Part shown: positions 22,540 through 51,773 of the stretch, one piece after another
How the letters are laid out: every line of letters begins with the position of its first letter
Numbering within the stretch: the first letter of the stretch is position 1
Virus record (IMG/VR): IMGVR_UViG_3300042391_000634
Location: 271,631-335,630 of that record
Reading direction: 5' to 3' (one strand)
DNA: 64,000 nt
The notes under the pieces: model-generated
Databases searched by the model: none
What the model was told of the DNA's origin: nothing
The model's input: the letters and a program-made list of their open reading frames with translations, nothing else
Program-made: the position numbers and the translations under genes

Positions 22540-24567
22540 ATGAAAATATTTGACGCAAACATCTCTGGATCACTAAACGTATCGGGCTCAGCCCATTTCT
22601 TTAATGATCTTACAGTAGACGGAACACTAAACGCCACCATCAGTGGAACATCCACAAACGCACTATCCTTAAACACAACGGGTTCCGCTCGTTTTGCTAC
22701 AACAGGTAGTAACGTATTTAAAGCCGACCAAACAATTAGCGGTTCACTTTATGTGACTACCGATATAATATTAAATGGACAATCATATACTGGACAAACT
22801 TCTGGTACATCAGGAACTAGTGGATCTAACGGTTCTTCAGGAACCTCAGGATCTAGTGGATCTAACGGTTCTTCAGGAACCTCAGGATCTAGTGGTTCAG
22901 ATGGTTCTTCAGGAACTTCAGGAACATCAGGTTCTTCAGGATCTAACGGATCTAGTGGAACATCAGGTTCTTCAGGATCTAACGGATCTAGTGGAACATC
23001 AGGATCTAGTGGTTCTAACGGTTCTTCAGGAACATCAGGTTCTTCAGGATCTAACGGATCTAGTGGAACATCAGGATCTAGTGGTTCTTCAGGAACATCA
23101 GGAACTAGTGGTTCTTCAGGAACTGCGGGTACATCAGGTTCTTCAGGTACCGTTACCTTATCAGGAACACAAGACAATGGTTTATTAACACTTAATGGAT
23201 CTTCTCCAAATGTGTCTGTAGAATCTAATTTAACATATGACGGATCTTTATTTAAGGTTAATTCAAACACAACAATTACAGGTTCATTGACCATTACCGC
23301 AAACTTAAACGTTTTAGGTTCTTCATCAATCACATATACTACTGCATCTCAATTAAGAGTAAATGATAATGTTATAACGGTTAATACCGCATCGCCAGGT
23401 GTAAGATTTGGTGGTTTATCTGTAATGGATAGTGGATCAAATAGTAGTACGGGATCTATATTTTGGGATTCATTAAATAACAGATGGGTATATCAACAAG
23501 AATCAGGATCATCTTACACAGGTGGTATCATAATGTCTGGTCCAAGAAACAATGGGGCTTTAGGAAGTGAAACTACTTTAACAAACAATAAAGTTGCAAA
23601 ATCTACGGGTGGAGATCATCTTGGTGATAGTAATATCAGTGACGACGGAACGACGGTTACAATTAGTACAAATACAGAAATTACAGGTTCATTAAAGGTA
23701 ACAAATGGTATCACAGGTACTTTAACAGGTAATATCACAGGTAATGCGGCAACGGTAACAACAAATGCTAACTTAACAGGTAATGTAACCTCAGTTGGTA
23801 ATTCAACGACAATAGCTGCGGGAGTTGTAACCGATTCAATGTTAGCTGGTTCTATATCAAACGCTAAATTAACTAACTCATCTGTAACGGTTTCGGCAGG
23901 AACAGGTATGAGTGGTGGTGGTGCGGTATCATTAGGTGGTACAGTGACATTAACAAACGCGGGTGTAACCTCAATCACAACAAATACAGGATTAAGTTCA
24001 AACGTAGGTGCAACAGGTGCGGTTACGATTACAAATACAATAACCAATAACAACCAATTAACAAATGGTGCGGGATATCTTTCAACCGCCGTAACCTCAG
24101 CAGTGGCTGGTACGGGTGTTGGGGTAAGTGCAGCAACAGGAGCCGTAACATTCTCAATCGGTCAAGCGGTAGCAACATCATCAAACGTTCAATTTAACTC
24201 ATTGGGTGTAGGAACTGCGGGACCAGTAACAGCAGGTTTAATCAGAGCAACAAATGATGTTATTGCGTTCTACGGTTCTGATGAAAGACTAAAAGAAAAC
24301 ATCACACCAATTGAAAATTCCTTAGATATCTTAAAACAAATAAATGGTTATTACTTCGATTGGAAGGAAATGCCAGGTATTCATGAGAACGAAGGTCATG
24401 ATATAGGGGTTGTAGCACAAGAAATTGGTGCTGTTTTACCTGAAATCGTAACAACAAGAGAGAATGGTTATATGGCCGTTAAATACGAAAAATTAGTTGC
24501 ATTGTTAATTCAAACAAACAAAGAATTATTAAATCGTGTTGAGGCTTTAGAAGCTAAAATAAAATAA
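22540..24567 (+). CDS. tail fibre/virion fibre with Ser-Gly repeat and C-terminal peptidase S74 intramolecular chaperone
   Basis: G/S/T/N-rich body; SDERLKENI...GVVAQE...VKYEKLVALLIQ followed by a coiled coil. Confidence 0.85.
   Translation: MKIFDANISGSLNVSGSAHFFNDLTVDGTLNATISGTSTNALSLNTTGSARFATTGSNVFKADQTISGSLYVTTDIILNGQSYTGQTSGTSGTSGSNGSSGTSGSSGSNGSSGTSGSSGSDGSSGTSGTSGSSGSNGSSGTSGSSGSNGSSGTSGSSGSNGSSGTSGSSGSNGSSGTSGSSGSSGTSGTSGSSGTAGTSGSSGTVTLSGTQDNGLLTLNGSSPNVSVESNLTYDGSLFKVNSNTTITGSLTITANLNVLGSSSITYTTASQLRVNDNVITVNTASPGVRFGGLSVMDSGSNSSTGSIFWDSLNNRWVYQQESGSSYTGGIIMSGPRNNGALGSETTLTNNKVAKSTGGDHLGDSNISDDGTTVTISTNTEITGSLKVTNGITGTLTGNITGNAATVTTNANLTGNVTSVGNSTTIAAGVVTDSMLAGSISNAKLTNSSVTVSAGTGMSGGGAVSLGGTVTLTNAGVTSITTNTGLSSNVGATGAVTITNTITNNNQLTNGAGYLSTAVTSAVAGTGVGVSAATGAVTFSIGQAVATSSNVQFNSLGVGTAGPVTAGLIRATNDVIAFYGSDERLKENITPIENSLDILKQINGYYFDWKEMPGIHENEGHDIGVVAQEIGAVLPEIVTTRENGYMAVKYEKLVALLIQTNKELLNRVEALEAKIK
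22801..23151 (+). repeat. 39 tandem X-G-S/T triplets (9-nt unit, 36-nt higher-order unit SGT-SGS-SGS-NGS)
   Basis: Counted directly from the DNA and protein sequence. Confidence 0.92.
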
Positions 24568-25348: not shown

Positions 25349-25980
25349 GTAAATCAATCAACAATAGTTCAATGTGGGAGGTAAAACCACTTAAGTTATC
25401 AATATTAGTTCCAACGAGGGATACTGTTCATAGTCAGTTCTCTTATTGTATAACTCAATTATTTAATACAACAAGAGAGGCGGGTATAGATGCTTATTTA
25501 TTCTACGATTCAAGTACAATATTATTAAATCAAAGAAACAATCTTATTAAGAAAGCAAAGGAAGTAAATTCAGATTATGTCCTTTGGTTAGATAGTGATA
25601 TGATGTTCCCACCAACCACAGCGTTACGTCTTTTAGAACACAATAAGGACATTGTGGCATGTAATTATATGAGACGTTCAAAACCTCTTAAAACGGTTGC
25701 ATACACCGATTTAAATGATTGGAATAGTTGGTTACCAATGGAAATACAGGAAGACCTCGTTAAAGTGGAGGGAGTAGGTATGGGATGTATGTTAATGAAA
25801 TTAGATACATTCGATAAATTAGAAAAACCATATTTTGAATTTAGATATAAAGAAAACACCGAAGATTACTTCGGTGAAGACTTTATTCTATTAGGTAAGT
25901 TAAGAGAATTAGGATATGAAGTGTTTATTGATACATACTTAAGTATGATGGTTAAACATGTTGGTAATTACGCCTTTTGA
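25345..25980 (+). CDS. GT2-like glycosyltransferase
   Basis: LWLDSDMMF (DxD), GMGCML, GEDF. Confidence 0.75.
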   Translation: MSKSINNSSMWEVKPLKLSILVPTRDTVHSQFSYCITQLFNTTREAGIDAYLFYDSSTILLNQRNNLIKKAKEVNSDYVLWLDSDMMFPPTTALRLLEHNKDIVACNYMRRSKPLKTVAYTDLNDWNSWLPMEIQEDLVKVEGVGMGCMLMKLDTFDKLEKPYFEFRYKENTEDYFGEDFILLGKLRELGYEVFIDTYLSMMVKHVGNYAF

Positions 25981-27080
25981 TTTTTGTCGACAATTAACAA
26001 ACTTAAATTACCATATTCATATAAACCTGGACTATAATCATCTATTGAAACTCTTATAGTGTTAATAACATTAAAATCATCCTGAGTTAAGTCATCACCA
26101 ACAAAAACTTTTATATCTACGTTATCGACATCCTCAAATTTAGATTTTAAATCATATCTTGTAAATTTCTTCTCGTTATCAATATAATTTTGAGGAATTT
26201 CATCTATTTCAATCTTATCAAAAAATGGTTCCAACAATTCAATATGTTTGGAACTACTTAATTTAACACCAACAACTTTCTTAACGTATGTAAAGTTATC
26301 TGTTGTTTGATAATCCATGGCATTAAACATAGGAATACTAATACCCCATTTTCTAATGAAATTTCTAATTGAATGAGCTTCAATGTCTTGACGTATGTTT
26401 TTCATTTCATCACTAAATCTTGATGTCTGTGAAACAAAATGATAAGTAATTGCACTATCACATGTTTTTAATTCATATCCTTTTAATTTCGCACGAATTA
26501 AAAAGTCATCATCTTCACAAAAACATGGAACAAAACTAAATCCATCAAATCCACCTAAATCAATAAATGTTTTCTTATATGATGACATAAAGAAAACTGC
26601 ACCATTATGTAGAGTATCACTATTTTTCCATTGTTTAACATAATCATTAAAATTTGAATCATCAAAATTATTAAATCCCCTACCTAAATCTATTAACACC
26701 TTACCTGGTCTTTCGTGACCTTTAAAAATGGGTGGTTCGATTGTTGTATATGACAATATCATATTCTCAGTTAACAATCTTTCAATTGCCTCCAAGAAAC
26801 CTTCACCGATAACCATATCGTTATGTATAAGAACAATCTTTTCAGTATCAACAAGATCAATACCGGCATTATATGTTTCAGAAAAAGTTAAACGATCATC
26901 ATCATGAAAGAAAGATAAATTTTCATCCATTAAAGATTGTAACCATTCTTTTGTACCATCACTTGAACCACCACTACTAATAACTAATGGTGCATCGGGG
27001 TAAATTTCACGAAGTCTTTTATAACATTCTGTTGTTAAATCTAATTTATTGTAAACGGCTAAGACAAAGCTTATATTCAT
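25968..27080 (-). CDS. GT2 glycosyltransferase
   Basis: SFVLAVYN, GSSDGT, HNDM, GGFD, EDDD. Confidence 0.82.
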   Translation of the reverse strand: MNISFVLAVYNKLDLTTECYKRLREIYPDAPLVISSGGSSDGTKEWLQSLMDENLSFFHDDDRLTFSETYNAGIDLVDTEKIVLIHNDMVIGEGFLEAIERLLTENMILSYTTIEPPIFKGHERPGKVLIDLGRGFNNFDDSNFNDYVKQWKNSDTLHNGAVFFMSSYKKTFIDLGGFDGFSFVPCFCEDDDFLIRAKLKGYELKTCDSAITYHFVSQTSRFSDEMKNIRQDIEAHSIRNFIRKWGISIPMFNAMDYQTTDNFTYVKKVVGVKLSSSKHIELLEPFFDKIEIDEIPQNYIDNEKKFTRYDLKSKFEDVDNVDIKVFVGDDLTQDDFNVINTIRVSIDDYSPGLYEYGNLSLLIVDKNQKA

Positions 27081-27098
27081 TTTATTATTTTTTAAGTT

Positions 27099-27722
27099 CT
27101 ACACTTTTTTATTGTTAAATTTATTAAATTTCTTACAAATCGTTAATCCATGTCTATATGGAAACGATTCATTATGGTCTTTTGGTTTTGTACCTAAGTC
27201 AATAACTTGATATCCAATATCAAAAAAATGATTAGACAAATCTCTTTCATCTGGTTGATGAATCCATCCAACACCATTATAAAATGAATGACTGGTTGTT
27301 TTTTGATAATGTAAATTAGTATCGTGTAAAACCAAGACCGTATCATCGTCTATTATACCACATTCCACCATGTTATTAAAAAAAGATAAGGAATAATTAT
27401 AGTTATGACAATCAAAAAATACCATATCAACTCTATCTTTAATATCGTCTTTAACCACTCGTTCTACAGATTTAATAATTGTTATATGATTAGGTGAAAT
27501 TGGGGTTAGGTTAGTAATATCAATAGTATAAACAGTACCATCTGTGCCGACTGATTCTAAAAAGTTTTTTGCGGAATAACCATGAAGTCCCCCCACCTCA
27601 ATTATTCTTTTAAAAACGCATGTTTTTATTATTGAAAATAAAACCAATGCTTCGTCGTCTTGAATTGGCCCTAAAACCATTTGACTAGGTTCTTGTGTAA
27701 GATGTTCTAAATTATATTTCAT
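27099..27722 (-). CDS. class I SAM methyltransferase (Methyltransf_24-like)
   Basis: IIEVGGLHGYS, VFFDCH, VLHDT. Confidence 0.72.
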   Translation of the reverse strand: MKYNLEHLTQEPSQMVLGPIQDDEALVLFSIIKTCVFKRIIEVGGLHGYSAKNFLESVGTDGTVYTIDITNLTPISPNHITIIKSVERVVKDDIKDRVDMVFFDCHNYNYSLSFFNNMVECGIIDDDTVLVLHDTNLHYQKTTSHSFYNGVGWIHQPDERDLSNHFFDIGYQVIDLGTKPKDHNESFPYRHGLTICKKFNKFNNKKV

Positions 27723-27738
27723 TTCATTTCATTTCATT

Positions 27739-28335
27739 TTATTTTATTTTATTATTAAAAACGTAAAACATCATCCTCTCAAATTCCCAAGGAGATTGTT
27801 CTCTTTCTTCAGTTATTTTTTTACACTTCTCATAAAAAGAAATGTCTCTCATTCTTATTTGTTCTTTAGTCACACAAAATAAACAACCGGCAACAAACGG
27901 ATATTCACCAATTGGAGGTGATGTAAATAATGATGACCATAATGTGTTGATGTTTAATACTGGTACGTGGTGAGGTAGACCGTTTGATTGACTTACCAAT
28001 TTTTCTTTAAACACACCATTACTAAAAAAATGACAATCATCGATATTCAATTTACTATAACCTAATGAATTAGGAAAAACATCTAATATCCAATCATAAT
28101 TCTTAACGTGGTCAAATGGTTCAGCTTGAGTAAAGAAAACCCAATCAGATAAATTATTGTAATTAGTCACGATGTGATGAAAATATGTGTGCATCTCCCT
28201 ACCAACATTATCTAATTTAATAGTGTTTAAAATTTCAACATTTGATTTATTGTAAATGATAATTTTATAATCCTTTACTTTATTTAACCAATTTAAATTT
28301 TCTTTATAGTATGATACAACTAATTCTTTTGTCAT
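27739..28335 (-). CDS. DUF3431-like protein
   Basis: YKENLNW, NVGREMHTY, FTQAEPFDH, FER. Confidence 0.72.
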   Translation of the reverse strand: MTKELVVSYYKENLNWLNKVKDYKIIIYNKSNVEILNTIKLDNVGREMHTYFHHIVTNYNNLSDWVFFTQAEPFDHVKNYDWILDVFPNSLGYSKLNIDDCHFFSNGVFKEKLVSQSNGLPHHVPVLNINTLWSSLFTSPPIGEYPFVAGCLFCVTKEQIRMRDISFYEKCKKITEEREQSPWEFERMMFYVFNNKIK

Positions 28336-29331
28336 TTATTTTGTTTTCCAAAATGAATAAATTCCTTTATCTAATTCGTAGAACGGCCACACAAATCTCT
28401 CTCTAACTGGTTGACTTTTAACCCACTCCCACATTTTAGTTAGACCTTCTTTTAAATCTGTTTTATGTTCAAAATCTAACAGGTCAATTGACTTTTGCCA
28501 AGTTGGTATAGAGTGTTTAACCTCGTGTCTACCTTCAAAATATTTCACTTCACCTCCACCAACTACTTCACGTAAAATTTCGTTAGCTTCATTGATTGAA
28601 TATTCTTTTACACCACCTAGATTAATTATCTCTTTCGATGCTCTAATATCTTGAGAAGCTTTCCATAATGGTTCAAGACTGTCATCAATATAACTAAACG
28701 CTCTTGTTTGTGTACCGTCACCAAATATTGTCATTGGTTCATTGATTGTGTGTTGATACATCCAAATACCTAATACGTTTCTATATTTGTCCCATACGTT
28801 TTGTTTAACACCGTAAACATTGTGAGGTCTAATGATACACCAATCAAGTCCGTGTTGTTCACCGGCAATCTGTATATCCATTTCACAACCATATTTAGCG
28901 ACACCGTAAGGGTCAATAGGTTTAGGAACTTGAATCTCATCAAACATGTTACCATCTTGATGACCATACACCGCTAATGTCGATGTGAATACTAATCTTT
29001 TAATATTGTGTTTAATACATTGTGTAATAATACGTGATGTTGCAACTAAATTGTTTTGATAGTTATATGTTCTAATAAATGGTGATAATCCTTCAGCAGC
29101 ATAAGCCGCAAAGTGATAAACGTAATCAAATTGGTGTCTTTCAAAACATTCTTCAACATTACCATTAACTAAATTCATCTCCCATAACTCCACTTTAGAA
29201 TTAACATTTTCTTTATAACCACCACTCATATCGTCTATACCAACAATATGAACATCGGGATGATTTTCAATAATGTAATCTGATAATCTTGACCCAAGTA
29301 AACCCGCAACTCCTGTAATTAAAATTTTCAT
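28336..29331 (-). CDS. NAD-dependent epimerase/dehydratase
   Basis: TGVAGLLGS, YGVAK (YxxxK), RPHNVYG. Confidence 0.9.
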   Translation of the reverse strand: MKILITGVAGLLGSRLSDYIIENHPDVHIVGIDDMSGGYKENVNSKVELWEMNLVNGNVEECFERHQFDYVYHFAAYAAEGLSPFIRTYNYQNNLVATSRIITQCIKHNIKRLVFTSTLAVYGHQDGNMFDEIQVPKPIDPYGVAKYGCEMDIQIAGEQHGLDWCIIRPHNVYGVKQNVWDKYRNVLGIWMYQHTINEPMTIFGDGTQTRAFSYIDDSLEPLWKASQDIRASKEIINLGGVKEYSINEANEILREVVGGGEVKYFEGRHEVKHSIPTWQKSIDLLDFEHKTDLKEGLTKMWEWVKSQPVRERFVWPFYELDKGIYSFWKTK

Positions 29332-29942
29332 ACTTTATAATAATTTTCTTTTAAATCATTTTCGTTTACATAATTTATTTTTTTCATAATGACTTGATAA
29401 CCATTGTTAACTATTTCTAAATATTTGTGATATCCATGATAAAACGCGTCAGCACCAGTTTTAACTTGCATATATTGTTCTTGTTCAAGTCCTCCACCGT
29501 AATCGTCAAATATAATATAACCATTATTTTTCAAACAGTAAAATGCATTAACAGCATCTTCTAAAACATATTTACACATATGATTACCATCAATGTAAAC
29601 AAAGTCTAAAAACTCTTTAGTGTCACCGTTATGGTTAAATGTTTTAAAACTATCGGCCGACTCACCTAAAATATATGTTACCTTATCTTCATATGGTTTA
29701 ATATTGTTCTCAATAAATTCATTTGTATTAATATCCATTATATAATGATGTGAACCTTCCTTTTTACAGAATTCATCTAAAATATAAACTGAAGAACCAC
29801 CATACAATGCACCTATTTCTAAACATACTCTTGGTTCATCACCATAGTTAGGTAAAAAATGGTCCCATGCATCCACATGATTTAAAAAGAAATAACGTTC
29901 TCCTTCTGGATATTTAAAATGTTCGGGGTATTGATATGACAT
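29328..29942 (-). CDS. class I SAM methyltransferase (Methyltransf_24-like)
   Basis: LEIGALYGGS, YIDGNH, IFDDY. Confidence 0.78.
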   Translation of the reverse strand: MSYQYPEHFKYPEGERYFFLNHVDAWDHFLPNYGDEPRVCLEIGALYGGSSVYILDEFCKKEGSHHYIMDINTNEFIENNIKPYEDKVTYILGESADSFKTFNHNGDTKEFLDFVYIDGNHMCKYVLEDAVNAFYCLKNNGYIIFDDYGGGLEQEQYMQVKTGADAFYHGYHKYLEIVNNGYQVIMKKINYVNENDLKENYYKV

Positions 29943-29944
29943 AA

Positions 29945-30676
29945 TTAATTTTTTTTATACATAAAGTTATAAACACCACAATCTTCCACATCACATGAAA
30001 CGTGTATGTTGTTTAACCATATTTTAGGGGTTTTTGTTGGTGTGTAATCGGATTGACCCCTATTACAAAGAATTAACCAATCTTCATATGTTTTATAATA
30101 GTAATGATTTAATTGAATAATATCTGTAGGGCCGTTGGGATTGAATGGGCCTCTAAAAAAATTCCTATTAGTGTCCATTAATTTATTTGATGGGTTGTGA
30201 GGTAAAGACATTGTTGATTCACTTTTTAAATTCAATAAAGTTTTTATATGATGATTAACATCTTTATCTCTAAATGTAAATTGTTTTATCAATGAATTTT
30301 TATTTTCATTATCTCTAACTAATTTATTATTAGAACCAAACATATACCAGTTCATCGATATTCCAAATTCATTATGGTATTCTAATATAAATTCTTTAAT
30401 ATTAGAATGTTTTTTTAGATGTATAAATTCATCACAATCAATGAAGGCAACCCAGTCATAATCATTTTTATATTTAGAAATAAAATCATTATACGATTTT
30501 ACTTGCTTGTGCTTACCTGGAAAATCAACAAGTATAATATTAGGATGGTTAATTTTACATTTCCAATCGTTTTGATAAATTATAATATCGTCAAAACCTA
30601 ATTTTAAATGATAATTACACCACTCCTCGATATAATGGTCCTCATCCTTTGCAATACACATAACCGATATTCTCAT
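29945..30676 (-). CDS. GT92/GT2-like glycosyltransferase
   Basis: KDEDHYIEEW..YH, FIDCDEF, LNHY. Confidence 0.78.
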   Translation of the reverse strand: MRISVMCIAKDEDHYIEEWCNYHLKLGFDDIIIYQNDWKCKINHPNIILVDFPGKHKQVKSYNDFISKYKNDYDWVAFIDCDEFIHLKKHSNIKEFILEYHNEFGISMNWYMFGSNNKLVRDNENKNSLIKQFTFRDKDVNHHIKTLLNLKSESTMSLPHNPSNKLMDTNRNFFRGPFNPNGPTDIIQLNHYYYKTYEDWLILCNRGQSDYTPTKTPKIWLNNIHVSCDVEDCGVYNFMYKKN

Positions 30677-31293
30677 AATGAACTATAGTAGTTGTTTTGT
30701 TTTTCTTGACGATCAATCGTCTTATGGTGTTGTATACAATATTCTTCATCTAATGGTAATGATGAAAATTTCTGACCACCTATTATTCGTTCGTGAACCT
30801 TACCATACCAAGTCATTCCTTTACGGTATATTCGTCCTTGAGCATCAGGAAAGTTTACCCATCCTTTTTTATTAACATTCCAACCCCATTTATTAATATG
30901 TTCTTGTGTTATACCATTAACAGTATTAATACGAGGAACAAATATTAAATCAACCTTTGGATTTAATTCTAATATCTGATGGAGATTTTTAATTACATAT
31001 TCACTAACCATTTCATCGGCATCTATTTGATAGATATAATCTCCCTGACAGTAATCATTCAATTTGTTTTTCCAATCCGCAAAGTTACCACCAAAATCAA
31101 ACCCTCTCCACGTTTGAACGTGAGGGAATTTATTATATGGTAATAAGAAATCTAATATTTCGGGATTGCCGTTCTTCTCATCATAGAGAATAACAATCTC
31201 ATCTTCCTTTCTTTTATGTTCAAATAAAAATGGAACTAATCTTTTTATTTCCTCTAATTCATTACAAACTGTAATTGCAAAACTTATTTTCAT
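30673..31293 (-). CDS. GT2 glycosyltransferase
   Basis: ISFAITVCNE, QIDADE, GKVHE. Confidence 0.82.
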   Translation of the reverse strand: MKISFAITVCNELEEIKRLVPFLFEHKRKEDEIVILYDEKNGNPEILDFLLPYNKFPHVQTWRGFDFGGNFADWKNKLNDYCQGDYIYQIDADEMVSEYVIKNLHQILELNPKVDLIFVPRINTVNGITQEHINKWGWNVNKKGWVNFPDAQGRIYRKGMTWYGKVHERIIGGQKFSSLPLDEEYCIQHHKTIDRQEKQNNYYSSL

Positions 31294-31294
31294 A

Positions 31295-31537
31295 TTATGC
31301 TCTTTGTCCTCTGTTTATTCTTCCCGTTAATATATTTATTACTTCGTTGTCAATTTCTTCCACAATTTGTTCCGACATTAATCTTGTTAATTCAGCCTCA
31401 GCATCAATTCCATGATAATAATTTAAATCATCAACCAATTCAGGTCTCCATTGTGCTCGTAATGTTCTAACGATATTCTGAATACCTTCCGATTGAATTG
31501 TTATCCCATGAAAAAATCTAAACTGTCTAACTCCCAT
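31295..31537 (-). CDS. 80-aa protein consisting largely of a T4 gp23 (major capsid protein)-like segment
   Basis: RTLRAQWRPELVDDLNYYHGIDAEAELTRLMSEQIVEEIDNEVI resembles the conserved gp23 R-L-A-x-ELAQDL-x-HG-DA-AEL block. Confidence 0.72.
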   Translation of the reverse strand: MGVRQFRFFHGITIQSEGIQNIVRTLRAQWRPELVDDLNYYHGIDAEAELTRLMSEQIVEEIDNEVINILTGRINRGQRA

Positions 31538-31538
31538 A

Positions 31539-31769
31539 TTATTGTCTTTCTCTTGTGAATAATTTAAATACTCTACCATTATCATTAAATGTCATTTCAG
31601 TATTACTCGTTGGACTTAAACGAATACTACAATCATTCGGACCATGAGCAAAAATAACTGGTTCATCATCACCAAATTGAAAACAAAATTCAACATTTGA
31701 TGGTTCAAATGAGACCGGTGTAAAACATAATGTAGGTGTTTCATCACCTTTAAAAAATTTGAAGTTCAT
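31539..31769 (-). CDS. hypothetical protein (N-terminal FKFFKG)
   Basis: 76-aa ORF within the operon. Confidence 0.55.
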   Translation of the reverse strand: MNFKFFKGDETPTLCFTPVSFEPSNVEFCFQFGDDEPVIFAHGPNDCSIRLSPTSNTEMTFNDNGRVFKLFTRERQ

Positions 31770-33031
31770 TATTTAACTTTATTTAATTTAGGTAATATTA
31801 ATTTAGTTTGTTGTGGAGGAGGTTGAAACGCAATTGAATAAGGTTTTAATATCTCACCAAACTTAACTTTCATTTTTTCTAAAGAAAAATTTTCTTTATT
31901 TTCTTCTTTAAGTTTTAATGACTTCAATAAAAAATTACTATAATCATTTTTAACTATTTTCATAATTTCAGCAGCTTCACCGTAGTTCGCCGTAAACCAT
32001 TTAGATCCTTTAATGATGAACTGATCAATTGCACTATCGTCAACATCTGTTAATTTACCACCAACCATAACGGATTTATCCATAGGTAAAAAATCTTTAT
32101 GTCCCGACCAATTAGAGGCAATAACGGGTTTTCCTGACATTGTGAATTCTAATAGTGGTCTACCGAATCCCTCACCTTTAGTAATCGATACCATAGATTT
32201 TATTTTTGGATGATTATACAAATCATTCATTTCTTTATTAGTAAGGTCACCAAATAACAAATATATTGAAGGTGGATTTTGTATATCGGTAACAACATCT
32301 TTAATTTTCTTTATAAACAAATCTCTTTCTTTAATTGAGAAATTAGATGATGATGTTTTTAATACTAATGCCGGCATATCCCTACCATCTTTAAATGATT
32401 CAACAAAACATTTAATTAACATACCAATGTCTTTTCTATCTTGACCTATATTACCTTTTAACCAATGACCAACAAATAAAAATGCAAAGTTTTCTTTTAT
32501 ATCCAATTTAAAATCTTTATTAATTACATCATTAAATATTGATGTATCAACACCCTCAAATAGAACCTCAATAGGTTTTTCTATTCTATGTTGTTTAATT
32601 ATTTCATTTGTATTTTTATTTCTTTCGTCATAAACCGTTGATAATAAAACTTCTTTAGAAAAATTAGATGTTGCAATAATTAAATCCATTTGATTACAAC
32701 CATCAACCCAATCTTTAGGGGCTACAGTTGTTTCAATACCTGCGGTGATACCAATGTTAAATTTACCAAATCTACGAAACTCATTAGGTACAGTAACTTG
32801 AATGTAGATGTCTGGTAATCCTTCAAATCTTGTTGTAATATTAGATTCAATCCATTTATGAAATGTATTGTCAGGTTCTAATGCAGTCATAGGTGTGTTA
32901 CCCCATACACAACTATCAATCTTTATATTAAAAAGATTCATTTGATATAATGATTCTAATAAATCTCTTGAATGTGATCCATAACCACTTCTTGTTTTAA
33001 CCGGTCCTCTAAATAATATTGTTGGTTTCAT
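31769..33031 (-). CDS. GT4 glycosyltransferase
   Basis: SGYG, DRKD, GEGFGRPLLE, WSGHKDF. Confidence 0.85.
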   Translation of the reverse strand: MKPTILFRGPVKTRSGYGSHSRDLLESLYQMNLFNIKIDSCVWGNTPMTALEPDNTFHKWIESNITTRFEGLPDIYIQVTVPNEFRRFGKFNIGITAGIETTVAPKDWVDGCNQMDLIIATSNFSKEVLLSTVYDERNKNTNEIIKQHRIEKPIEVLFEGVDTSIFNDVINKDFKLDIKENFAFLFVGHWLKGNIGQDRKDIGMLIKCFVESFKDGRDMPALVLKTSSSNFSIKERDLFIKKIKDVVTDIQNPPSIYLLFGDLTNKEMNDLYNHPKIKSMVSITKGEGFGRPLLEFTMSGKPVIASNWSGHKDFLPMDKSVMVGGKLTDVDDSAIDQFIIKGSKWFTANYGEAAEIMKIVKNDYSNFLLKSLKLKEENKENFSLEKMKVKFGEILKPYSIAFQPPPQQTKLILPKLNKVK

Positions 33032-34392
33032 TAAATTACTTTATATAAATTAAATCTCTCTCTTGGAGTGAAATTTTTTATTGTTTTGTTAATCCCATCA
33101 CACATTTTATCACACATAATTTTCGATGATAGGTTTTTAATTGCCCATTCTCTTCCCTTTAAACCTCTTTCTTTTCTTTCTTCTTTAGACCAATTATACA
33201 TTTCCATTATCGTATCGGCAACATCATTGTTATTAACTCTATCATCGTACAAGTAAGGTGTTAATGGTGAACCATTTAAATTAATTGCTGATGACCATAT
33301 AGGTATAACCCATTCACCATATGGGATAGTTTCATAATCCTTTTTACTGTGTAATGTTTCTATATTTATATAATCATTTTCTGTAAACGGAAATCCACAT
33401 TGGTCTTGTAATCCACCTGTTACATTAACAATAATAGGGGTTCCAGCCATTATACTTTCGGCGGTACCTAAACCAAATCCTTCATTATTTGCAATGTTAA
33501 TCGTACAATCAGCAAGATTATATAATTTATTTAAAACATCAGACTCAATTTTAGACTGAGAAAATATTACGTCATAATTTGGACATATCTTATCTCTAAC
33601 AGCGTATAAATCAGTACCATTGTTATCTATAGGAGTTGTGTGCATTAATAAAACACATCTCTTTGATTTTTCTTTAGGAAGTTTATCACAAAACAACTTA
33701 AAAGAATTAATAACATCTGAAGGTTGTTTTCTACGAATATTTCTACTGTTAAAAAACAAAACAAAATCATATTCTTTATCACCAAACAAATCTTTTTTTA
33801 CATCAATCAATTCTTTATCCTCCAATGGTTTAAATGTATCTTGATTGATACCGTGAGGAACGTAACTAATTTGCCAATCTTGTAATGGTTTACAAAAACC
33901 GTCATCTAATTTACCAACACGGTGGACAATTCCATATGTTAATTTAGAAATACAACCTAACCAATCACAACTTTCGTAGTAGTTTTTATTATATAATGGG
34001 TCCGGTGTGTTATCCCAAATATGGTAATAAAGAATTGGAACTTGTTGTCTAATTTCATGTTCATTGTCATATAACCATTGCCAATAGTGAGGATCGGTAA
34101 AGTGTAATATTGCATCGATTTTAAATTCACTTAATAATTTTCTTAAAATGTTTATATCACCGTAACTATTGTATGGTATAATTTTTAATTCAGCATCGGC
34201 AATTCCAGTTTTTTCTCTAATGTCGGTATCCACATCAACCATTTTTCCATTTTCAGGATGATTAATACCAGCACCTAATTGAACCCAATTAAATCTATCT
34301 ACAGTACCCATTACAATTTCTCTTGACATAGTGGAAATTCCCGATGTCATTCGTAAATCGTCTGATAATAATAAAATTCTTTTTTTACCCAT
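33031..34392 (-). CDS. GT4 glycosyltransferase
   Basis: VPHGI, RNIRRK, NEGFGLGTAES, TGGLQDQ. Confidence 0.87.
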   Translation of the reverse strand: MGKKRILLLSDDLRMTSGISTMSREIVMGTVDRFNWVQLGAGINHPENGKMVDVDTDIREKTGIADAELKIIPYNSYGDINILRKLLSEFKIDAILHFTDPHYWQWLYDNEHEIRQQVPILYYHIWDNTPDPLYNKNYYESCDWLGCISKLTYGIVHRVGKLDDGFCKPLQDWQISYVPHGINQDTFKPLEDKELIDVKKDLFGDKEYDFVLFFNSRNIRRKQPSDVINSFKLFCDKLPKEKSKRCVLLMHTTPIDNNGTDLYAVRDKICPNYDVIFSQSKIESDVLNKLYNLADCTINIANNEGFGLGTAESIMAGTPIIVNVTGGLQDQCGFPFTENDYINIETLHSKKDYETIPYGEWVIPIWSSAINLNGSPLTPYLYDDRVNNNDVADTIMEMYNWSKEERKERGLKGREWAIKNLSSKIMCDKMCDGINKTIKNFTPRERFNLYKVI

Positions 34393-34393
34393 A

Positions 34394-34591
34394 TTAATAT
34401 TTTGACCCACTCACAGATAAATCTGTGTAATTGTTTATTTTATTTCTAAATGCATCATCTTTAACATAAAGATCTAATGTACGATTAACTAATTTTTGTA
34501 GGTTAATATTACCATCAATTGCATTTATTTTAAATTTTCTGTAAACGTCTTCCAATACATGGACACTCGTTAATTTTTTTTCTACTTTCAT
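34394..34591 (-). CDS. small putative ribbon-helix-helix DNA-binding protein
   Basis: KLTSVHV strand followed by two helices; first gene of the minus-strand GT operon. Confidence 0.45.
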   Translation of the reverse strand: MKVEKKLTSVHVLEDVYRKFKINAIDGNINLQKLVNRTLDLYVKDDAFRNKINNYTDLSVSGSKY

Positions 34592-34627
34592 ATTCAATTA
34601 TATATTTAGATATATATTACTAATTCA

Positions 34628-34657
34628 AAAAATATCGCCAATTAAGACGATATTTTT
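34628..34657 (-). terminator. intrinsic terminator-like hairpin
   Basis: AAAAATATCG ... CGATATTTTT, downstream of the minus-strand ORF 34681..34848. Confidence 0.55.
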
Positions 34658-34680
34658 AATTATCATTAATATTAACGATA

Positions 34681-34848
34681 CTAAGTGTTAAGTTGATTTA
34701 ACTTAGCAATTATTGCATCAACAGTTTTTTGTTGTTCTTCTGTTAGTGTTGGAGATTGTGTAGGTTGAGATTGGTCAACAGTCACATTAACTTCCGCAGG
34801 TTGATTTACAACCTCTGTGTTTTTATTTTTTTTACAGCCGCATCCCAT
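34681..34848 (-). CDS. 55-aa protein starting MGCGCKK
   Basis: Translated by hand; has its own TATTTATA motif (34863-34870, minus strand) and terminator. Confidence 0.7.
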   Translation of the reverse strand: MGCGCKKNKNTEVVNQPAEVNVTVDQSQPTQSPTLTEEQQKTVDAIIAKLNQLNT

Positions 34849-51329: not shown

Positions 51330-51360
51330 TTTGTGATATCAAAAACATTTAATATCTTTG
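51330..51360 (+). promoter_or_regulatory. Bacteroidota sigma70-type promoter
   Basis: TTTG-N19-TATCTTTG. Confidence 0.65.
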
Positions 51361-51365
51361 TTGGT

Positions 51366-51773
51366 ATGAATATATTACTATTAATCTTTATAATATTGGT
51401 TTGGGCAACCTCATCTGTTTATGTGATGTATTATCATAATAAACATTACACATTAGGTTTGGATATGGTAATAGGTGCAATATTGTTAGGACCAATATTA
51501 GCTTTAATAGTAGGAAAGGATGTTGAGGAGAAGAAGAAATATTATGGGGTAATGGAACGGGAGAATAACAATCAACATAGAGGATGGTTTAGAACAATGT
51601 CAGAAATTAATAGACAACGAATGACAAGTTTTGGTAGAACTATTCCACCTCCACCACCAATATCACGAGTAGAACGAGCACAATCAGAAAGAGAAACGGC
51701 AATTAGGTCTGCAATAGAAAGAATAGATAAAAATAAATTAAAAGACTTTAAATTTTTGAGCGGTGGTAAGTAA
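51366..51773 (+). CDS. membrane protein
   Basis: Two hydrophobic helices and PPPPP; start moved to ATG 51366. Confidence 0.55.
   Translation: MNILLLIFIILVWATSSVYVMYYHNKHYTLGLDMVIGAILLGPILALIVGKDVEEKKKYYGVMERENNNQHRGWFRTMSEINRQRMTSFGRTIPPPPPISRVERAQSERETAIRSAIERIDKNKLKDFKFLSGGK

What the first reader, a model, noticed from the sequence alone, without database searches (positions are those of the whole stretch)
31295..31537. Stand-alone mini-gene encoding a slice of T4-like major capsid protein
Seen: about 50 of the 80 residues match the highly conserved gp23 block (R.L.A.W..EL..DL...HG.DAEAEL...S..I..EI..EVI). It has an intact start and stop and sits in a glycosyltransferase operon with no other capsid sequence nearby. 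Known: several anti-phage systems sense major capsid protein (CapRel SJ46, Lit with the Gol peptide). Inference: a capsid-mimic decoy, an assembly modulator, or an adaptor linking glycosylation enzymes to the capsid. A decayed duplication is the less interesting alternative.
Basis: partly seen in the sequence, partly recalled or inferred. Interest (0 to 1): 0.7.

Follow-up and report, generated by a model that had tools for sequence, protein, structure and literature searches.

The report
Conserved stand-alone capsid-protein slice gene
A giant T4-like phage keeps, under selection, an 80-residue gene made from one slice of its major capsid protein plus a short N-terminal tag shared with about 20 other small phage proteins. 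This looks like a new kind of capsid-mimic accessory protein, and its job is still unproven.

Summary
Window 31295..31537 (-) is an intact 80-aa ORF. Residues 11-70 match the Gp23 major-capsid family (Pfam E=2e-13) and are 51% identical to residues 349-405 of this phage's own 591-aa capsid protein, which lies 177 kb away. No other capsid sequence flanks it.

It is not a decayed duplicate:
- About 470 proteins of similar size exist in metagenomes.
- Wherever enough flanking DNA was held (about 18 loci, down to 42% identity), it lies just after the second of two GT4 glycosyltransferase genes. Where the contig continues, a GT2 usually follows.
- dN/dS is 0.15-0.5 overall and 0.03-0.15 in the N-terminal 32 codons.
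- Only this reading frame stays open in relatives.

On T4 gp23 it maps to residues 251-310: I-domain linker 2, the short acidic P-domain helix and the spine helix. That region contains one cluster of T4 head-length mutations. It is not the Gol region.

New here: its N-terminus carries an F-[KR]-F-F-x-G tag shared by about 22 otherwise unrelated small ORFs in this genome. Other capsid slices also occur as tagged mini-genes.

Best guess (about 0.4): a capsid-protein mimic that docks on the capsid or prohead lattice or its partners. The glycosylation-adaptor and immune-decoy readings remain open. Function is untested.

The parts
31295..31537 (-). The mini-gene: an 80-aa protein (P0001) including its stop codon. 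It is an exapted slice of the major capsid protein.
   Evidence: ORF. Pfam Gp23 E=2e-13. 51% identity to own capsid protein residues 349-405. About 470 homologues of similar size. dN/dS 0.15-0.5. The only frame open in all 11 relatives.
31505..31528 (-). Codons 4-11 (R-Q-F-R-F-F-H-G): the N-terminal F-[KR]-F-F-x-G tag.
   Evidence: F6, F8, F9 and G11 are invariant in 32 family members. The same motif sits at the N-terminus of about 22 small ORFs of this genome, with synonymous codon variation. It lies outside the Pfam Gp23 match.
31328..31507 (-). Codons 11-70: the capsid-homologous core. It corresponds to T4 gp23 251-310: the P-proximal part of I-domain linker 2, the short acidic P-domain helix and the spine helix.
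   Evidence: Alignment to PDB 6uzc/5vf3 gp23. Domain names and positions of the length mutations A268, A275, D285, D287 and the gp31-bypass mutations G292, V306, V307 come from PMC9546572.
31448..31468 (-). Codons 24-30 (R-T-L-R-A-Q-W): a conserved basic strand motif shared with all Gp23-type capsid proteins.
   Evidence: R24, R27 and A28 are nearly invariant and W30 is invariant. The capsid protein has ERKLRASW and T4 has SRQLKAAY.
31388..31444 (-). [quoted passage not shown]
   Evidence: H42, I44, D45, E49 and L50 are conserved. AF2 predicts a helix at 33-42. T4 D285 and D287 align to D45 and E47.
31298..31315 (-). Codons 75-80 (N-R-G-Q-R-A): the C-terminal N-G-G-x-R-A motif. The final R-A is nearly invariant.
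   Evidence: Alignment A1. Arg codons (AGA/AGG/CGA) and downstream junctions differ between loci while R-A is kept.
31539..31769 (-). Upstream 76-aa ORF. It starts M-N-F-K-F-F-K-G (same tag) and has a small beta body. Its stop is 1 nt before the mini-gene's ATG.
   Evidence: ORF. Homologues lie upstream of the mini in most relatives, some untagged. AF2 gives pLDDT 62.6 with four strands and a disordered tag at 1-18. Only a weak PKD hit, E=0.03.
30673..31293 (-). Downstream 206-aa GT2 glycosyltransferase. Its ATG lies 1 nt after the mini-gene's stop.
   Evidence: Pfam Glycos_transf_2 E=1.9e-7. It follows the mini in nearly all loci where the contig continues. dN/dS 0.03-0.13.
31769..33031 (-). 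GT4-type glycosyltransferase number 2 (420 aa).
   Evidence: PHROG 2170 E=1.4e-19; Pfam Glycos_transf_1 E=2e-5. It precedes the mini (with or without the small beta ORF) in every locus that holds upstream DNA except L021, which lacks both GT4 genes.
33031..34410 (-). GT4-type glycosyltransferase number 1 (459 aa).
   Evidence: Pfam Glycos_transf_1 E=3.8e-6; PHROG 2170 E=4.6e-14.
34394..34597 (-). 67-aa ORF at the head of the cassette. It is conserved, including in phage immuto. It looks like a ribbon-helix-helix protein by eye only.
   Evidence: No Pfam hit. 68-97% identical in relatives. An immuto 60-aa counterpart exists.
25968..30676 (-). Rest of the minus-strand sugar operon: GT2/GT92-like (243 aa), two methyltransferases, an NAD-dependent epimerase/dehydratase, a DUF3431 protein and a GT2 (370 aa).
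   Evidence: Pfam hits. A terminator-like hairpin at 25857-25876 (-) closes the unit.

Best explanation
What it is (well supported): a real, selectively maintained gene for an 80-aa protein. It was carved long ago out of a T4-type major capsid protein (MCP). It keeps only the return strand of the E-loop-equivalent I-domain linker, the short acidic P-domain helix and the spine helix. Ahead of these sits an N-terminal F-[KR]-F-F-x-G tag, and after them a C-terminal N-G-G-x-R-A tail.

The tag and the R-x-L-R-A-x-W strand are the most conserved parts. The stretch between them varies in length. That is the position where real capsid proteins carry their inserted I-domain. So the protein is best read as the capsid protein's hairpin plus spine helix with the I-domain removed and everything after the spine helix cut off (inference).

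How it most likely works (inferred, not shown): on its own it is predicted to be only partly folded. It keeps the residues that in T4 gp23 lie at the capsomer periphery near the quasi-threefold contacts, where head-length mutations cluster. I therefore propose that it acts by mimicry. It would dock on the phage's own capsid-protein lattice or prohead, or on a partner that normally reads this part of the capsid protein. There it would serve as an accessory factor, either an assembly modulator or cement, or a dock for other factors.

The tag is shared with about 20 unrelated small proteins. It is probably a common docking or targeting peptide, analogous in layout to the T4 capsid targeting sequence.

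The fixed position between the glycosyltransferase genes may mean it links that cassette to the capsid. It may also only reflect insertion into a variable slot that has been inherited since.

Confidence is split. That it is a real, selected, exapted capsid slice: about 0.9. The capsid-docking mimicry mechanism: about 0.4, which is the figure given in the confidence field.
For: Real gene under selection:
- About 470 homologues of 80-110 aa, and 664 hits in the 50%-identity representative library, many of them small tagged proteins.
- The Atlas holds several clusters of 127-148 members.
- In 12 IMG/VR loci at 62-93% identity the mini keeps the same immediate neighbours. The same holds in more distant ones at 42-53%.
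- dN/dS is 0.03-0.15 for codons 1-32 and 0.15-0.52 overall. The bootstrap CI is below 1 in 7 of 8 pairs, similar to the neighbouring GT4 at 0.13-0.22.
- It is the only open frame of six in all relatives.

Own family identity:
- 29 of 30 minis form one group apart from capsid proteins (support 94/92).
- They carry signature residues of their own: R-T/R-L instead of R-K-L, E-L-T-R, E-I-D-N/E-E.
- The same block is invariant in 38 capsid proteins of the clade.

Capsid-contact mapping:
- Residues 11-70 align to T4 gp23 251-310.
- PMC9546572 places length mutations A268V, A275T, D285V and D287V/N there, next to the short acidic P-domain helix near the quasi-threefold axes. It describes I-domain linker 2 as an inter-capsomer contact.

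Needs a partner: the AF2 monomer has pLDDT 53, with only helices 33-42 and 46-76 and no structure in the best-conserved first 32 residues.

Tag as a shared peptide signal:
- About 22 real ORFs carry it at the N-terminus, against a background of 3.3e-4 per residue.
- Its codons vary synonymously.
- The protein bodies are mostly unrelated.
- It is predicted to be disordered in the 76-aa neighbour.
- Precedent: diverse T4 internal proteins share only a roughly 10-aa N-terminal CTS, MKTYQEFIAE. Targeting depends on residues 4 and 7 (PMC3012670, PMC9026906, PMC8442874).
Against: - No binding was shown. The co-folding job for capsid protein plus mini gave no verdict, which is not evidence either way.
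- There are no expression-timing or virion data. No RNA run was listed, and the T4 late-promoter motif is not enriched.
- The gene lies in a sugar operon, not the head module. That fits a glycosylation-linked role at least as naturally.
- The conserved residues are also the most conserved residues of all Gp23 proteins. They may be kept simply for folding of the hairpin-helix unit rather than for capsid contacts.
- The helix part evolves much faster than in the capsid protein, with dN/dS up to 0.8 in some pairs.
- The tag lacks T4-type CTS hallmarks. There is no [LIV]-x-E cleavage motif after it (3 of 23 against about 7 expected), and the proteins are not basic.
- Equating the tag with I-domain linker 1 rests on position and pattern only.
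Confidence: 0.4

Rival explanations
1. Glycosylation-cassette partner. The mini (with the tagged 76-aa beta protein) is a subunit, adaptor, specificity factor or acceptor for the neighbouring glycosyltransferases. For example, it could present or recognise the capsid protein so that the virion is glycosylated. Alternatively, the tag could be the docking peptide that marks small proteins as enzyme clients.
For: - It lies directly after GT4 number 2 (with or without the small beta ORF) in every locus that holds upstream DNA except L021, and before the 206-aa GT2 in nearly all loci where the contig continues, down to 42% identity.
- The junctions are tight: TAA-T-ATG, or an ATGA overlap.
- The only two tagged ORFs outside the 3.7-17.5 kb array are inside this cassette.
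- The window holds about 35 kb of sugar-modifying genes with a tail-fibre gene embedded among them.
- The best (weak) PDB hits of the GT2 are protein or peptide glycosyltransferases: GalT1 at E=0.01 and SunS at E=0.47.
Against: - The same GT4-GT4-[X]-GT2 cassette in the cultured phage immuto holds an unrelated 152-aa Zn-ribbon protein in the slot. So the mini is not a core part of the enzyme set.
- In L021 capsid-slice genes sit at the locus without the GT4 pair. In L024 an epimerase follows instead of the GT2.
- No Ser, Thr, Cys or Asn-x-Ser/Thr is conserved in the family, so it is not a conserved acceptor.
- Synteny can be explained by vertical descent, since the neighbours diverge in step.
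- The PDB hits are not significant.
Confidence: 0.22
2. Decoy or interference protein. The slice imitates a highly conserved capsid-protein epitope. It would either occupy a host immune sensor or host factor that reads capsid proteins without triggering it, or poison capsid assembly of co-infecting related phages.
For: - Several defence systems sense capsid proteins: CapRel (PMC9712102), Avs7 and Dsr1 (PMC13581612), and Lit/Gol (PMC3014915).
- The mini retains blocks that are invariant in clade capsid proteins yet evolves faster than the capsid protein, as expected for an arms-race factor.
- Other conserved capsid blocks also occur as tagged mini-genes. One is the N-terminal block, which lies in the first quarter of gp23 and is therefore probably the Gol-equivalent region (L021 gene 2; genome 12980..13453).
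- Sigma-70-like hexamers (TTGAAT, then a spacer of about 20 nt, longer than the 16-18 nt the scanner accepts, then TATAAT) read by eye just upstream of the cassette would allow early expression (a weak hint, not reported by the scan).
Against: - No sensor or target is known for this host or clade.
- This slice is not the Gol region.
- A fragment of a trigger would be expected to activate rather than block a sensor, unless it has changed specifically.
- A poison of conserved contacts would also hit the phage's own assembly.
- The location in a sugar operon is unexplained.
- The strongest constraint is on the tag and strand rather than on the surface-exposed acidic helix.
Confidence: 0.15
3. Non-functional remnant. 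A decaying partial duplication or recombination scar of the capsid gene, kept open by chance or by constraints belonging to neighbouring genes.
For: - It is short and has a low-confidence fold.
- The C-terminal half shows relaxed constraint in some pairs, with dN/dS 0.7-0.8.
- One member (P0159) groups with clade capsid proteins, suggesting repeated exchange with the capsid gene.
- L021 shows slices separated by 28-nt tandem duplications that break a once-continuous frame.
Against: - There are hundreds of intact homologues across 42-100% identity.
- Indels are in frame only.
- dN/dS is significantly below 1.
- Five alternative frames are full of stops in every relative.
- The family has its own conserved tag and C-terminal R-A, neither of which is a capsid-protein feature.
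- It does not overlap neighbouring genes.
Confidence: 0.04

Closest known systems
T4-type major capsid protein gp23 and its paralogue gp24 (Pfam PF07068; HK97 fold with inserted I-domain)
   Same: There is clear sequence homology over about 60 residues, covering I-domain linker 2, the short P-domain helix and the spine helix. The hallmark motifs R-x-L-[RK]-A-x-[WY] and H-x-[IM]-D-A-[ED]-A-E-L are kept. gp24 shows that capsid-protein paralogues can take on accessory roles.
   Different: It covers only profile positions 135-194 of 376. There is no N-arm, I-domain, A-domain or C-terminal P-domain sheet, so it cannot form a capsomer. It has a non-capsid N-terminal tag and C-terminal tail and its own signature residues. 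It evolves several times faster than the capsid protein.
[quoted passage not shown]
   Same: In both, a short N-terminal peptide of about 10 aa is shared by many small, otherwise unrelated proteins of a T4-like phage. These are encoded largely in a tandem, plastic array. Aromatic residues at positions 4 and 7 of the shortest tag form (M-K-P-F-K-F-F) mirror the targeting-critical residues 4 and 7 of the T4 CTS.
   Different: There is no detectable homology. No [LIV]-x-E protease site follows the tag, and the proteins are not basic. Packaging into heads is untested. The mini and the 76-aa ORF lie in a sugar operon.
Small capsid decoration or cement proteins such as T4 Soc (80 aa, clamps capsomers near quasi-threefold sites)
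   Same: They are of similar size. The proposed site of action is the capsomer periphery and I-domain linkers, which in T4 form the Soc site (PMC9546572). The genome has no Soc homologue.
   Different: There is no sequence relationship. Soc is not derived from the capsid protein. There is no evidence that the mini is in virions.
Satellite-encoded capsid-protein homologues and capsid-size redirectors (PICI Ccm, P4 Sid, SaPI CpmAB; from my own knowledge, not checked here)
   Same: The shared idea is a capsid-related accessory protein that alters how the major capsid protein assembles.
   Different: Those are satellite genes acting on a helper phage, and Ccm is a full HK97-fold protein. This is a phage-borne 80-aa fragment, and no size effect has been shown.
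Gol peptide of gp23, sensed through EF-Tu by the Lit protease
   Same: Both are short, highly conserved stretches of the T4-type capsid protein with a biological activity of their own.
   Different: Gol lies in the first quarter of gp23 and the mini maps to 251-310. Gol is part of the capsid protein and not a separate gene. The probable Gol-equivalent block is carried by other slice genes (L021 gene 2; genome 12980..13453), not by this one.

Membership tests
Gp23-type major capsid protein (PF07068) | Significant sequence match to the family profile | tested here: met
   50.9 bits against a gathering score of 24.4, E=2e-13. PHROG 138 E=1.2e-12.
Gp23-type major capsid protein (PF07068) | Complete HK97-type fold (N-arm, I/E-loop, P-domain sheet, A-domain) of about 400-600 aa, able to form capsomers | tested here: not met
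   The protein is 80 aa. The match covers profile positions 135-194 of 376 only and own capsid protein residues 349-405 of 591. The AF2 model shows two helices only. It is a homologue of a fragment, not a capsid protein.
Pseudogene or decayed duplication | Frameshifts or stops, lineage-restricted, neutral evolution (dN/dS about 1) | tested here: not met
   The frame is intact in all relatives and the other five frames are closed. There are about 470 homologues. dN/dS is 0.15-0.52 with CI below 1 in 7 of 8 pairs, and 0.03-0.15 in codons 1-32. No capsid remnants lie in the flanks.
T4 CTS-bearing internal (ejection) proteins | Short N-terminal peptide shared by otherwise unrelated small proteins of one phage | tested here: met
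   About 22 real ORFs carry M-x(0-4)-F-[KR]-[FL]-[FL] at the N-terminus (25 regex matches, at least 2 judged spurious nested ORFs). The bodies are mostly unrelated. The tag is protein-level, because its codons vary.
T4 CTS-bearing internal (ejection) proteins | Prohead-protease site ([LI]-x-E) at the end of the tag; basic proteins | tested here: not met
   [LIV]-x-E occurs within 20 residues after the tag in 3 of 23 proteins, against about 7 expected by chance. pI is mostly 4.1-6.9.
T4 CTS-bearing internal (ejection) proteins | Incorporation into the prohead core and presence in virions | not testable with these tools
   This needs virion or prohead proteomics. No cultured member was found.
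Gol-type trigger peptide of Lit | Corresponds to the Gol region in the first quarter of gp23 | tested here: not met
   The mini aligns to gp23 251-310 of 521. Gol is a 29-residue region in the first quarter (PMC3014915).
Soc-type decoration protein | Homology to Soc (PF16855) | tested here: not met
   There is no Soc match anywhere in the genome, and the mini matches Gp23 only. Functional analogy remains untested.
Glycocin/RiPP-like peptide substrate of an adjacent GT2 | Conserved Cys, Ser or Thr acceptor in an inter-helix loop, with disulfide-forming Cys pairs | tested here: not met
   No Cys occurs in the family, and no Ser, Thr or Asn is among the invariant or near-invariant columns. The inter-helix loop is the most variable spot among close relatives.
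Recoded or fused product with the upstream ORF (frameshift or ribosome hop) | Conserved overlap or slippery site linking the two frames in relatives | tested here: not met
   The junctions differ: a 1-nt gap, an 8-nt overlap, or a different upstream gene. In L005 a stop closes the extension, and L020 has no small ORF at all.

The most novel reading that the evidence does not exclude
The phage clade expresses the most conserved blocks of its own major capsid protein as separate, tagged mini-proteins. This one is the widespread form, and others carry the N-terminal (probably Gol-equivalent) and C-terminal blocks. They would serve as molecular mimics, in one of two ways. They could be decoys that pre-occupy host sensors or host factors that recognise capsid proteins (EF-Tu/Lit-like, Avs7-like or CapRel-like). 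Alternatively, the FKFF tag could imitate the capsid protein's own I-domain linker-1 strand, so that tagged cargo docks by strand addition onto unexpanded proheads. Either would be a previously undescribed class of capsid-mimic accessory proteins.
Probability: 0.15. Interest if true: 0.88.

Novelty: new variant of a known kind. Interest (0 to 1): 0.62.

Why it matters
Capsid-protein paralogues such as gp24 and satellite Ccm are known, and so are targeting tags such as the T4 CTS. I found no description of a conserved, selected, stand-alone slice of an HK97-fold capsid protein in the papers searched. It is also absent from the cultured-phage collection.

The family is abundant in metagenomes, with hundreds of sequences, and belongs to a clade of roughly 330-kb T4-like phages. 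If it binds the capsid lattice, it offers a natural minimal module for the inter-capsomer contacts that set head size in T4-type phages. If it is a decoy, it would be the first phage-encoded capsid mimic against capsid-sensing immunity.

The FKFF tag, shared by about 20 unrelated small proteins, is a separate lead. It may be a new targeting or docking signal, directly testable by fusing it to a reporter.

Even the modest reading is useful for annotation. These ORFs are currently called 'hypothetical' or 'Gp23 domain-containing' and could be mistaken for broken capsid genes.

Tried and rejected
- Co-folding of the own capsid protein (alignment A2) with the mini (A1) gave no verdict, score 0.00. 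It is not used as evidence either way.
- The AF2 monomer of the mini had low confidence, pLDDT 53. The 76-aa neighbour had pLDDT 62.6. Neither was good enough for fold searches, so none were run.
- tblastn of the mini against 50,697 cultured or deposited phage records hit only full-length capsid genes.
- Metatranscriptome evidence: no RNA run was listed.
- Expression class: the T4 late-promoter motif TATAAATA is not enriched, with 17 found against 23.8 expected. The sigma-70 scan did not exceed shuffled controls.
- Pfam and PHROG searches of ten tagged ORFs found nothing except a sub-threshold Gp23 N-terminal match in one.
- The idea that the 76-aa ORF is a remnant of the capsid protein's I-domain found no similarity, best E=0.35.
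- The idea that the tag is a DNA or RNA element, or a Shine-Dalgarno artefact, was rejected. Its codons vary synonymously and the spacing to the ATG is 0-2 nt.
- T4-type CTS processing was not supported.
- Frameshift or ribosome-hop fusion with the upstream ORF was rejected because there is no conserved junction.
- Antisense ORFs at 31275..31415 and 31297..31470 (+) are closed by stops in relatives.
- A search for stand-alone homologues of the C-terminal slice gene (L021 gene 3) found only itself. So the three-slice array is rare and not a general rule.
- Cluster look-ups gave no names or accessions.
- PDB sequence searches of the GT2 and GT4 gave only weak, non-significant hits.
Full report
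**Setting.** The window is the last 64 kb (271631-335630) of a 335,630-bp IMG/VR virus record with 31% G+C. The genome encodes one full-length T4-type major capsid protein (MCP) of 591 aa at 124971..126746. An acidic scaffold-like gene lies just upstream of it. The MCP clade is very abundant in metagenomes: thousands of hits, and the best 120 are 78-93% identical. The nearest cultured relative found is Flavobacterium phage immuto, at 66% nucleotide identity over the GT2 gene.

**Observation.** Window 31295..31537 (-) is an intact ORF of 80 aa, stored as P0001.
- Residues 11-70 match Pfam Gp23 (E=2e-13, profile 135-194 of 376) and PHROG 138.
- They match the phage's own MCP at residues 349-405 (29/57 identical, E=2e-17).
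- They match T4 gp23 residues 251-310.
- A tblastn of the MCP against the whole genome finds no other capsid-like sequence near the locus.
- The ORF is separated by a single base from the stop of an upstream 76-aa ORF and from the ATG of a downstream 206-aa GT2 (TAA-T-ATG at both ends).

**It is a real gene.**
- A length-restricted search of 5.8 billion proteins returned about 470 proteins of 80-110 aa. All of the 120 listed carry the Gp23 hit.
- An exhaustive search of 50%-identity representatives returned 664 hits. Many are 70-125-aa stand-alone proteins that align from residue 2-4 to the C-terminus at 42-65% identity.
- Twelve IMG/VR loci at 62-93% identity share the gene order: 67-aa ORF, GT4 (about 459 aa), GT4 (about 420 aa), small beta ORF(s), mini, GT2 (about 206 aa). 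A methyltransferase usually follows.
- More distant members keep the position: P0131 at 53%, P0137 at 43%, P0153 at 46%, P0126, P0146 and P0159.
- Nei-Gojobori dN/dS is 0.03-0.15 for the first 32 codons and 0.1-0.8 for the rest. All indels are in frame.
- Whole-gene values are 0.15-0.52, with bootstrap intervals below 1 in 7 of 8 pairs. The neighbouring GT4 gives 0.13-0.22 and the GT2 gives 0.03-0.13.
- In all 11 sequences only the mini's frame is open. The other five frames carry 3-18 stops each.

The 'decayed duplication' reading is rejected.

**Anatomy.** An alignment of 32 members (A1) shows four parts.
1. An N-terminal motif with F6, F8, F9 and G11 invariant.
2. A stretch of very variable length.
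3. The strand motif R24-x-x-R27-A28-x-W30, followed by H42-x-I44-D45-x-x-x-E49-L50 and D63.
4. A tail N-G-G-x-R-A whose last two residues are nearly invariant. Some members insert 15-20 residues before them.

The Arg codon varies (AGA, AGG, CGA) and the downstream junctions differ, so the R-A is selected at the protein level.

By the T4 structure paper (PMC9546572), gp23 251-310 comprises three elements. These are the P-proximal part of I-domain linker 2 (the linkers being the equivalent of the HK97 E-loop), the short acidic P-domain helix at the capsomer periphery, and the spine helix. Several T4 mutations fall in this stretch: the head-length mutations A268V, A275T, D285V and D287V/N, and the gp31-bypass changes G292S, V306I and V307I. 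A268, D285 and D287 align with the mini's A28, D45 and E47.

The variable stretch between the tag and the R-x-L-R-A-x-W strand lies where real MCPs carry the I-domain. So I read the protein as the MCP hairpin plus spine helix with the I-domain removed and everything after the spine helix missing. Equating the tag with linker 1 is my inference.

The block is invariant in 38 MCPs of the clade, whereas the minis vary and have their own signature residues. In a tree of the 54-column block, 29 of 30 minis form one group (support 94/92). P0159 sits with the clade's MCPs (96/90). A single origin is not rejected (p-AU 0.23). Mini branches are several times longer than MCP branches.

**The tag.** The upstream 76-aa ORF begins M-N-F-K-F-F-K-G. 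A census of the genome for ATG-started frames with M-x(0-4)-F-[KR]-[FL]-[FL] gave 25 matches. About 22 are real small ORFs:
- 20 lie in a tandem array at 3.7-17.5 kb;
- the other two are the 76-aa ORF and the mini.

The motif's background frequency is 3.3e-4 per residue. The codons vary synonymously, the reversed-pattern control gives 0-1 matches, and phage immuto has none. The bodies of these proteins are mostly unrelated, with only three similar pairs, and they match no Pfam or PHROG family. In the AF2 model of the 76-aa protein the tag is disordered ahead of a four-strand beta body.

The closest precedent is the T4 capsid targeting sequence. It is a roughly 10-residue N-terminal peptide (MKTYQEFIAE) shared by diverse internal proteins, and targeting depends on residues 4 and 7. 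The resemblance is architectural only. No [LIV]-x-E site follows the tag, and the proteins are not basic.

**Other capsid slices.**
- One tagged ORF of the array (genome 12980..13453, 157 aa) carries the MCP's N-terminal conserved block, with a sub-threshold Gp23 match at profile 8-89. It is conserved in four IMG/VR contigs at 71-91%.
- P0131 and P0129 fuse the mini-type slice to that N-terminal block.
- A 1.8-kb contig (L021) has three tandem tagged mini-genes at the equivalent locus. They match MCP residues 344-402, 74-106 and 519-579. They are separated by 28-nt tandem duplications of the tag-coding sequence (an exact duplication at the second junction, a near-identical one at the first), each of which breaks a once-continuous frame.
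- By the T4 alignment, these three blocks include or adjoin the three clusters of T4 length mutations. They are also simply the most conserved MCP blocks.
- The C-terminal slice gene has no other homologue of similar size. So only the slice studied here is widespread.

**Mechanism.** The AF2 monomer is poorly defined, with pLDDT 53 and helices only at 33-42 and 46-76. The best-conserved first 32 residues are unstructured in it. This suggests the protein folds against a partner.

My preferred reading (about 0.4) is a capsid-protein mimic. It would dock on the phage's own capsid or prohead lattice, or on a partner that reads this part of the MCP, with the tag as a shared docking peptide.

The main rival (about 0.22) is a role tied to the glycosyltransferases, given the fixed position and tight coupling. 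Against it, the slot is variable. Immuto has an unrelated Zn-ribbon protein there, and L021 and L024 differ. No acceptor residue is conserved either.

A decoy or interference role (about 0.15) fits the known capsid-sensing defences, but it has no direct support, and this slice is not the Gol region.

The one co-folding job (MCP plus mini) gave no verdict and is not counted. No expression data could be obtained.

**Verdict.** The feature is real, conserved and apparently undescribed. The papers searched do not describe it, and the cultured-phage collection lacks it. Its origin and anatomy are well supported. Its function is inferred only.

Noticed in passing
G000:C1:3765-17493 (held as L022:1-13494); in the window only 31539-31769 and 31295-31537: A tandem array of about 20 small ORFs (72-176 aa) each begins M-x(0-4)-F-[KR]-[FL]-[FL]. 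Many overlap their neighbour so that the upstream ORF ends ...N-E-T-I* on the same bases that encode M-K-P-F-K of the next. The bodies are mostly unrelated and match no Pfam or PHROG family.
   Followed up: partly
L021:722-1446 (ENA ERZ27297473 k141_485352; also one Logan contig): Three tandem tagged mini-genes encode three separate conserved blocks of the capsid protein (own MCP 344-402, 74-106, 519-579). They are separated by 28-nt tandem duplications of the tag-coding sequence (AATAATTTTAAATTTTTACGAGGATATG, exact at the second junction; a near-identical pair at the first). Removing one copy at each junction would restore a single frame. The block order is permuted relative to the capsid protein.
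   Followed up: partly
G000:C1:12980-13453 (L022:8981-9454): A tagged 157-aa ORF carries the capsid protein's N-terminal conserved block (A-R-R-x-A-G-R-T-I-A-Q-D-L-V-P-V-Q-P-L-G-S-P). The Gp23 match is sub-threshold at profile 8-89. It is conserved at 71-91% in four IMG/VR contigs. By position in gp23 this is probably the Gol-equivalent block.
   Followed up: partly
L024:275-505 (protein P0159): This tagged mini at the same locus is closer to the clade's capsid protein (62%) than to other minis (49%), and it groups with the capsid proteins in the tree. That suggests gene conversion with, or a second capture from, the capsid gene.
   Followed up: partly
G000:C1:8577-9044 / 9041-9424, and window 51333-51773 (genome 322963-323403): Two untagged ORFs end in the tag sequence (...L-T-F-K-F-F-R-G* and ...D-F-K-F-L-S-G-G-K*). 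The first lies directly before a tagged ORF, as in L021. This hints that new tagged genes arise by duplication or recombination at the tag.
   Followed up: no
window 1-25980 (+ strand): The left 25 kb of the window also contains sugar-modification genes. These include a Nol-like carbamoyltransferase (5039-6706) and a 911-aa GT-methyltransferase fusion (16958-19693). A tail-fibre-like gene (22540-24567) is embedded among them. Together with the minus-strand operon this makes a glycan island of about 35 kb.
   Followed up: partly
window 34681-34848 (-) and 34630-34660: A 55-aa ORF starts M-G-C-G-C-K-K and has a counterpart in L021 (51 aa). It is followed by a hairpin plus T-run that looks like a terminator, just upstream of the cassette's first gene. 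TTGAAT and TATAAT hexamers about 20 nt apart precede that gene; the spacing is longer than the canonical 16-18 nt.
   Followed up: no
L023:7465-7923 (MW353176.1, immuto35A_91): Cultured Flavobacterium phage immuto has the same small-ORF, GT4, GT4, [slot], GT2 cassette. An unrelated 152-aa Cys-rich (Zn-ribbon-like) hypothetical protein sits in the slot. It has no FKFF-tagged ORFs anywhere in its genome.
   Followed up: partly
window 31295-31537 compared with neighbours: Synonymous divergence of the mini (dS 0.5-0.8) is lower than that of the flanking GT2 and GT4 genes in the same genome pairs (dS 0.7-2.0). The cause is unknown. It could be the small sample, recombination or some nucleotide-level constraint.
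   Followed up: no
whole window: ARAGORN finds no tRNA genes. The T4 late-promoter motif TATAAATA is not enriched (17 found, 23.8 expected). So this T4-like phage probably uses a different late-promoter signal.
   Followed up: no
window 31542-31769 and relatives (alignment A3): The small beta ORF family upstream of the mini exists in two forms. One is tagged (M-N-F-K-F-F-K-G-D-E) and one is untagged and Lys-rich (M-A-K-S-T-K-K-K-K-G-E). L012 has both in tandem. All end in a conserved G-[KR]-x-F-K-[LF]-[FY]-A-R-x-x-Q, which again resembles the tag.
   Followed up: partly
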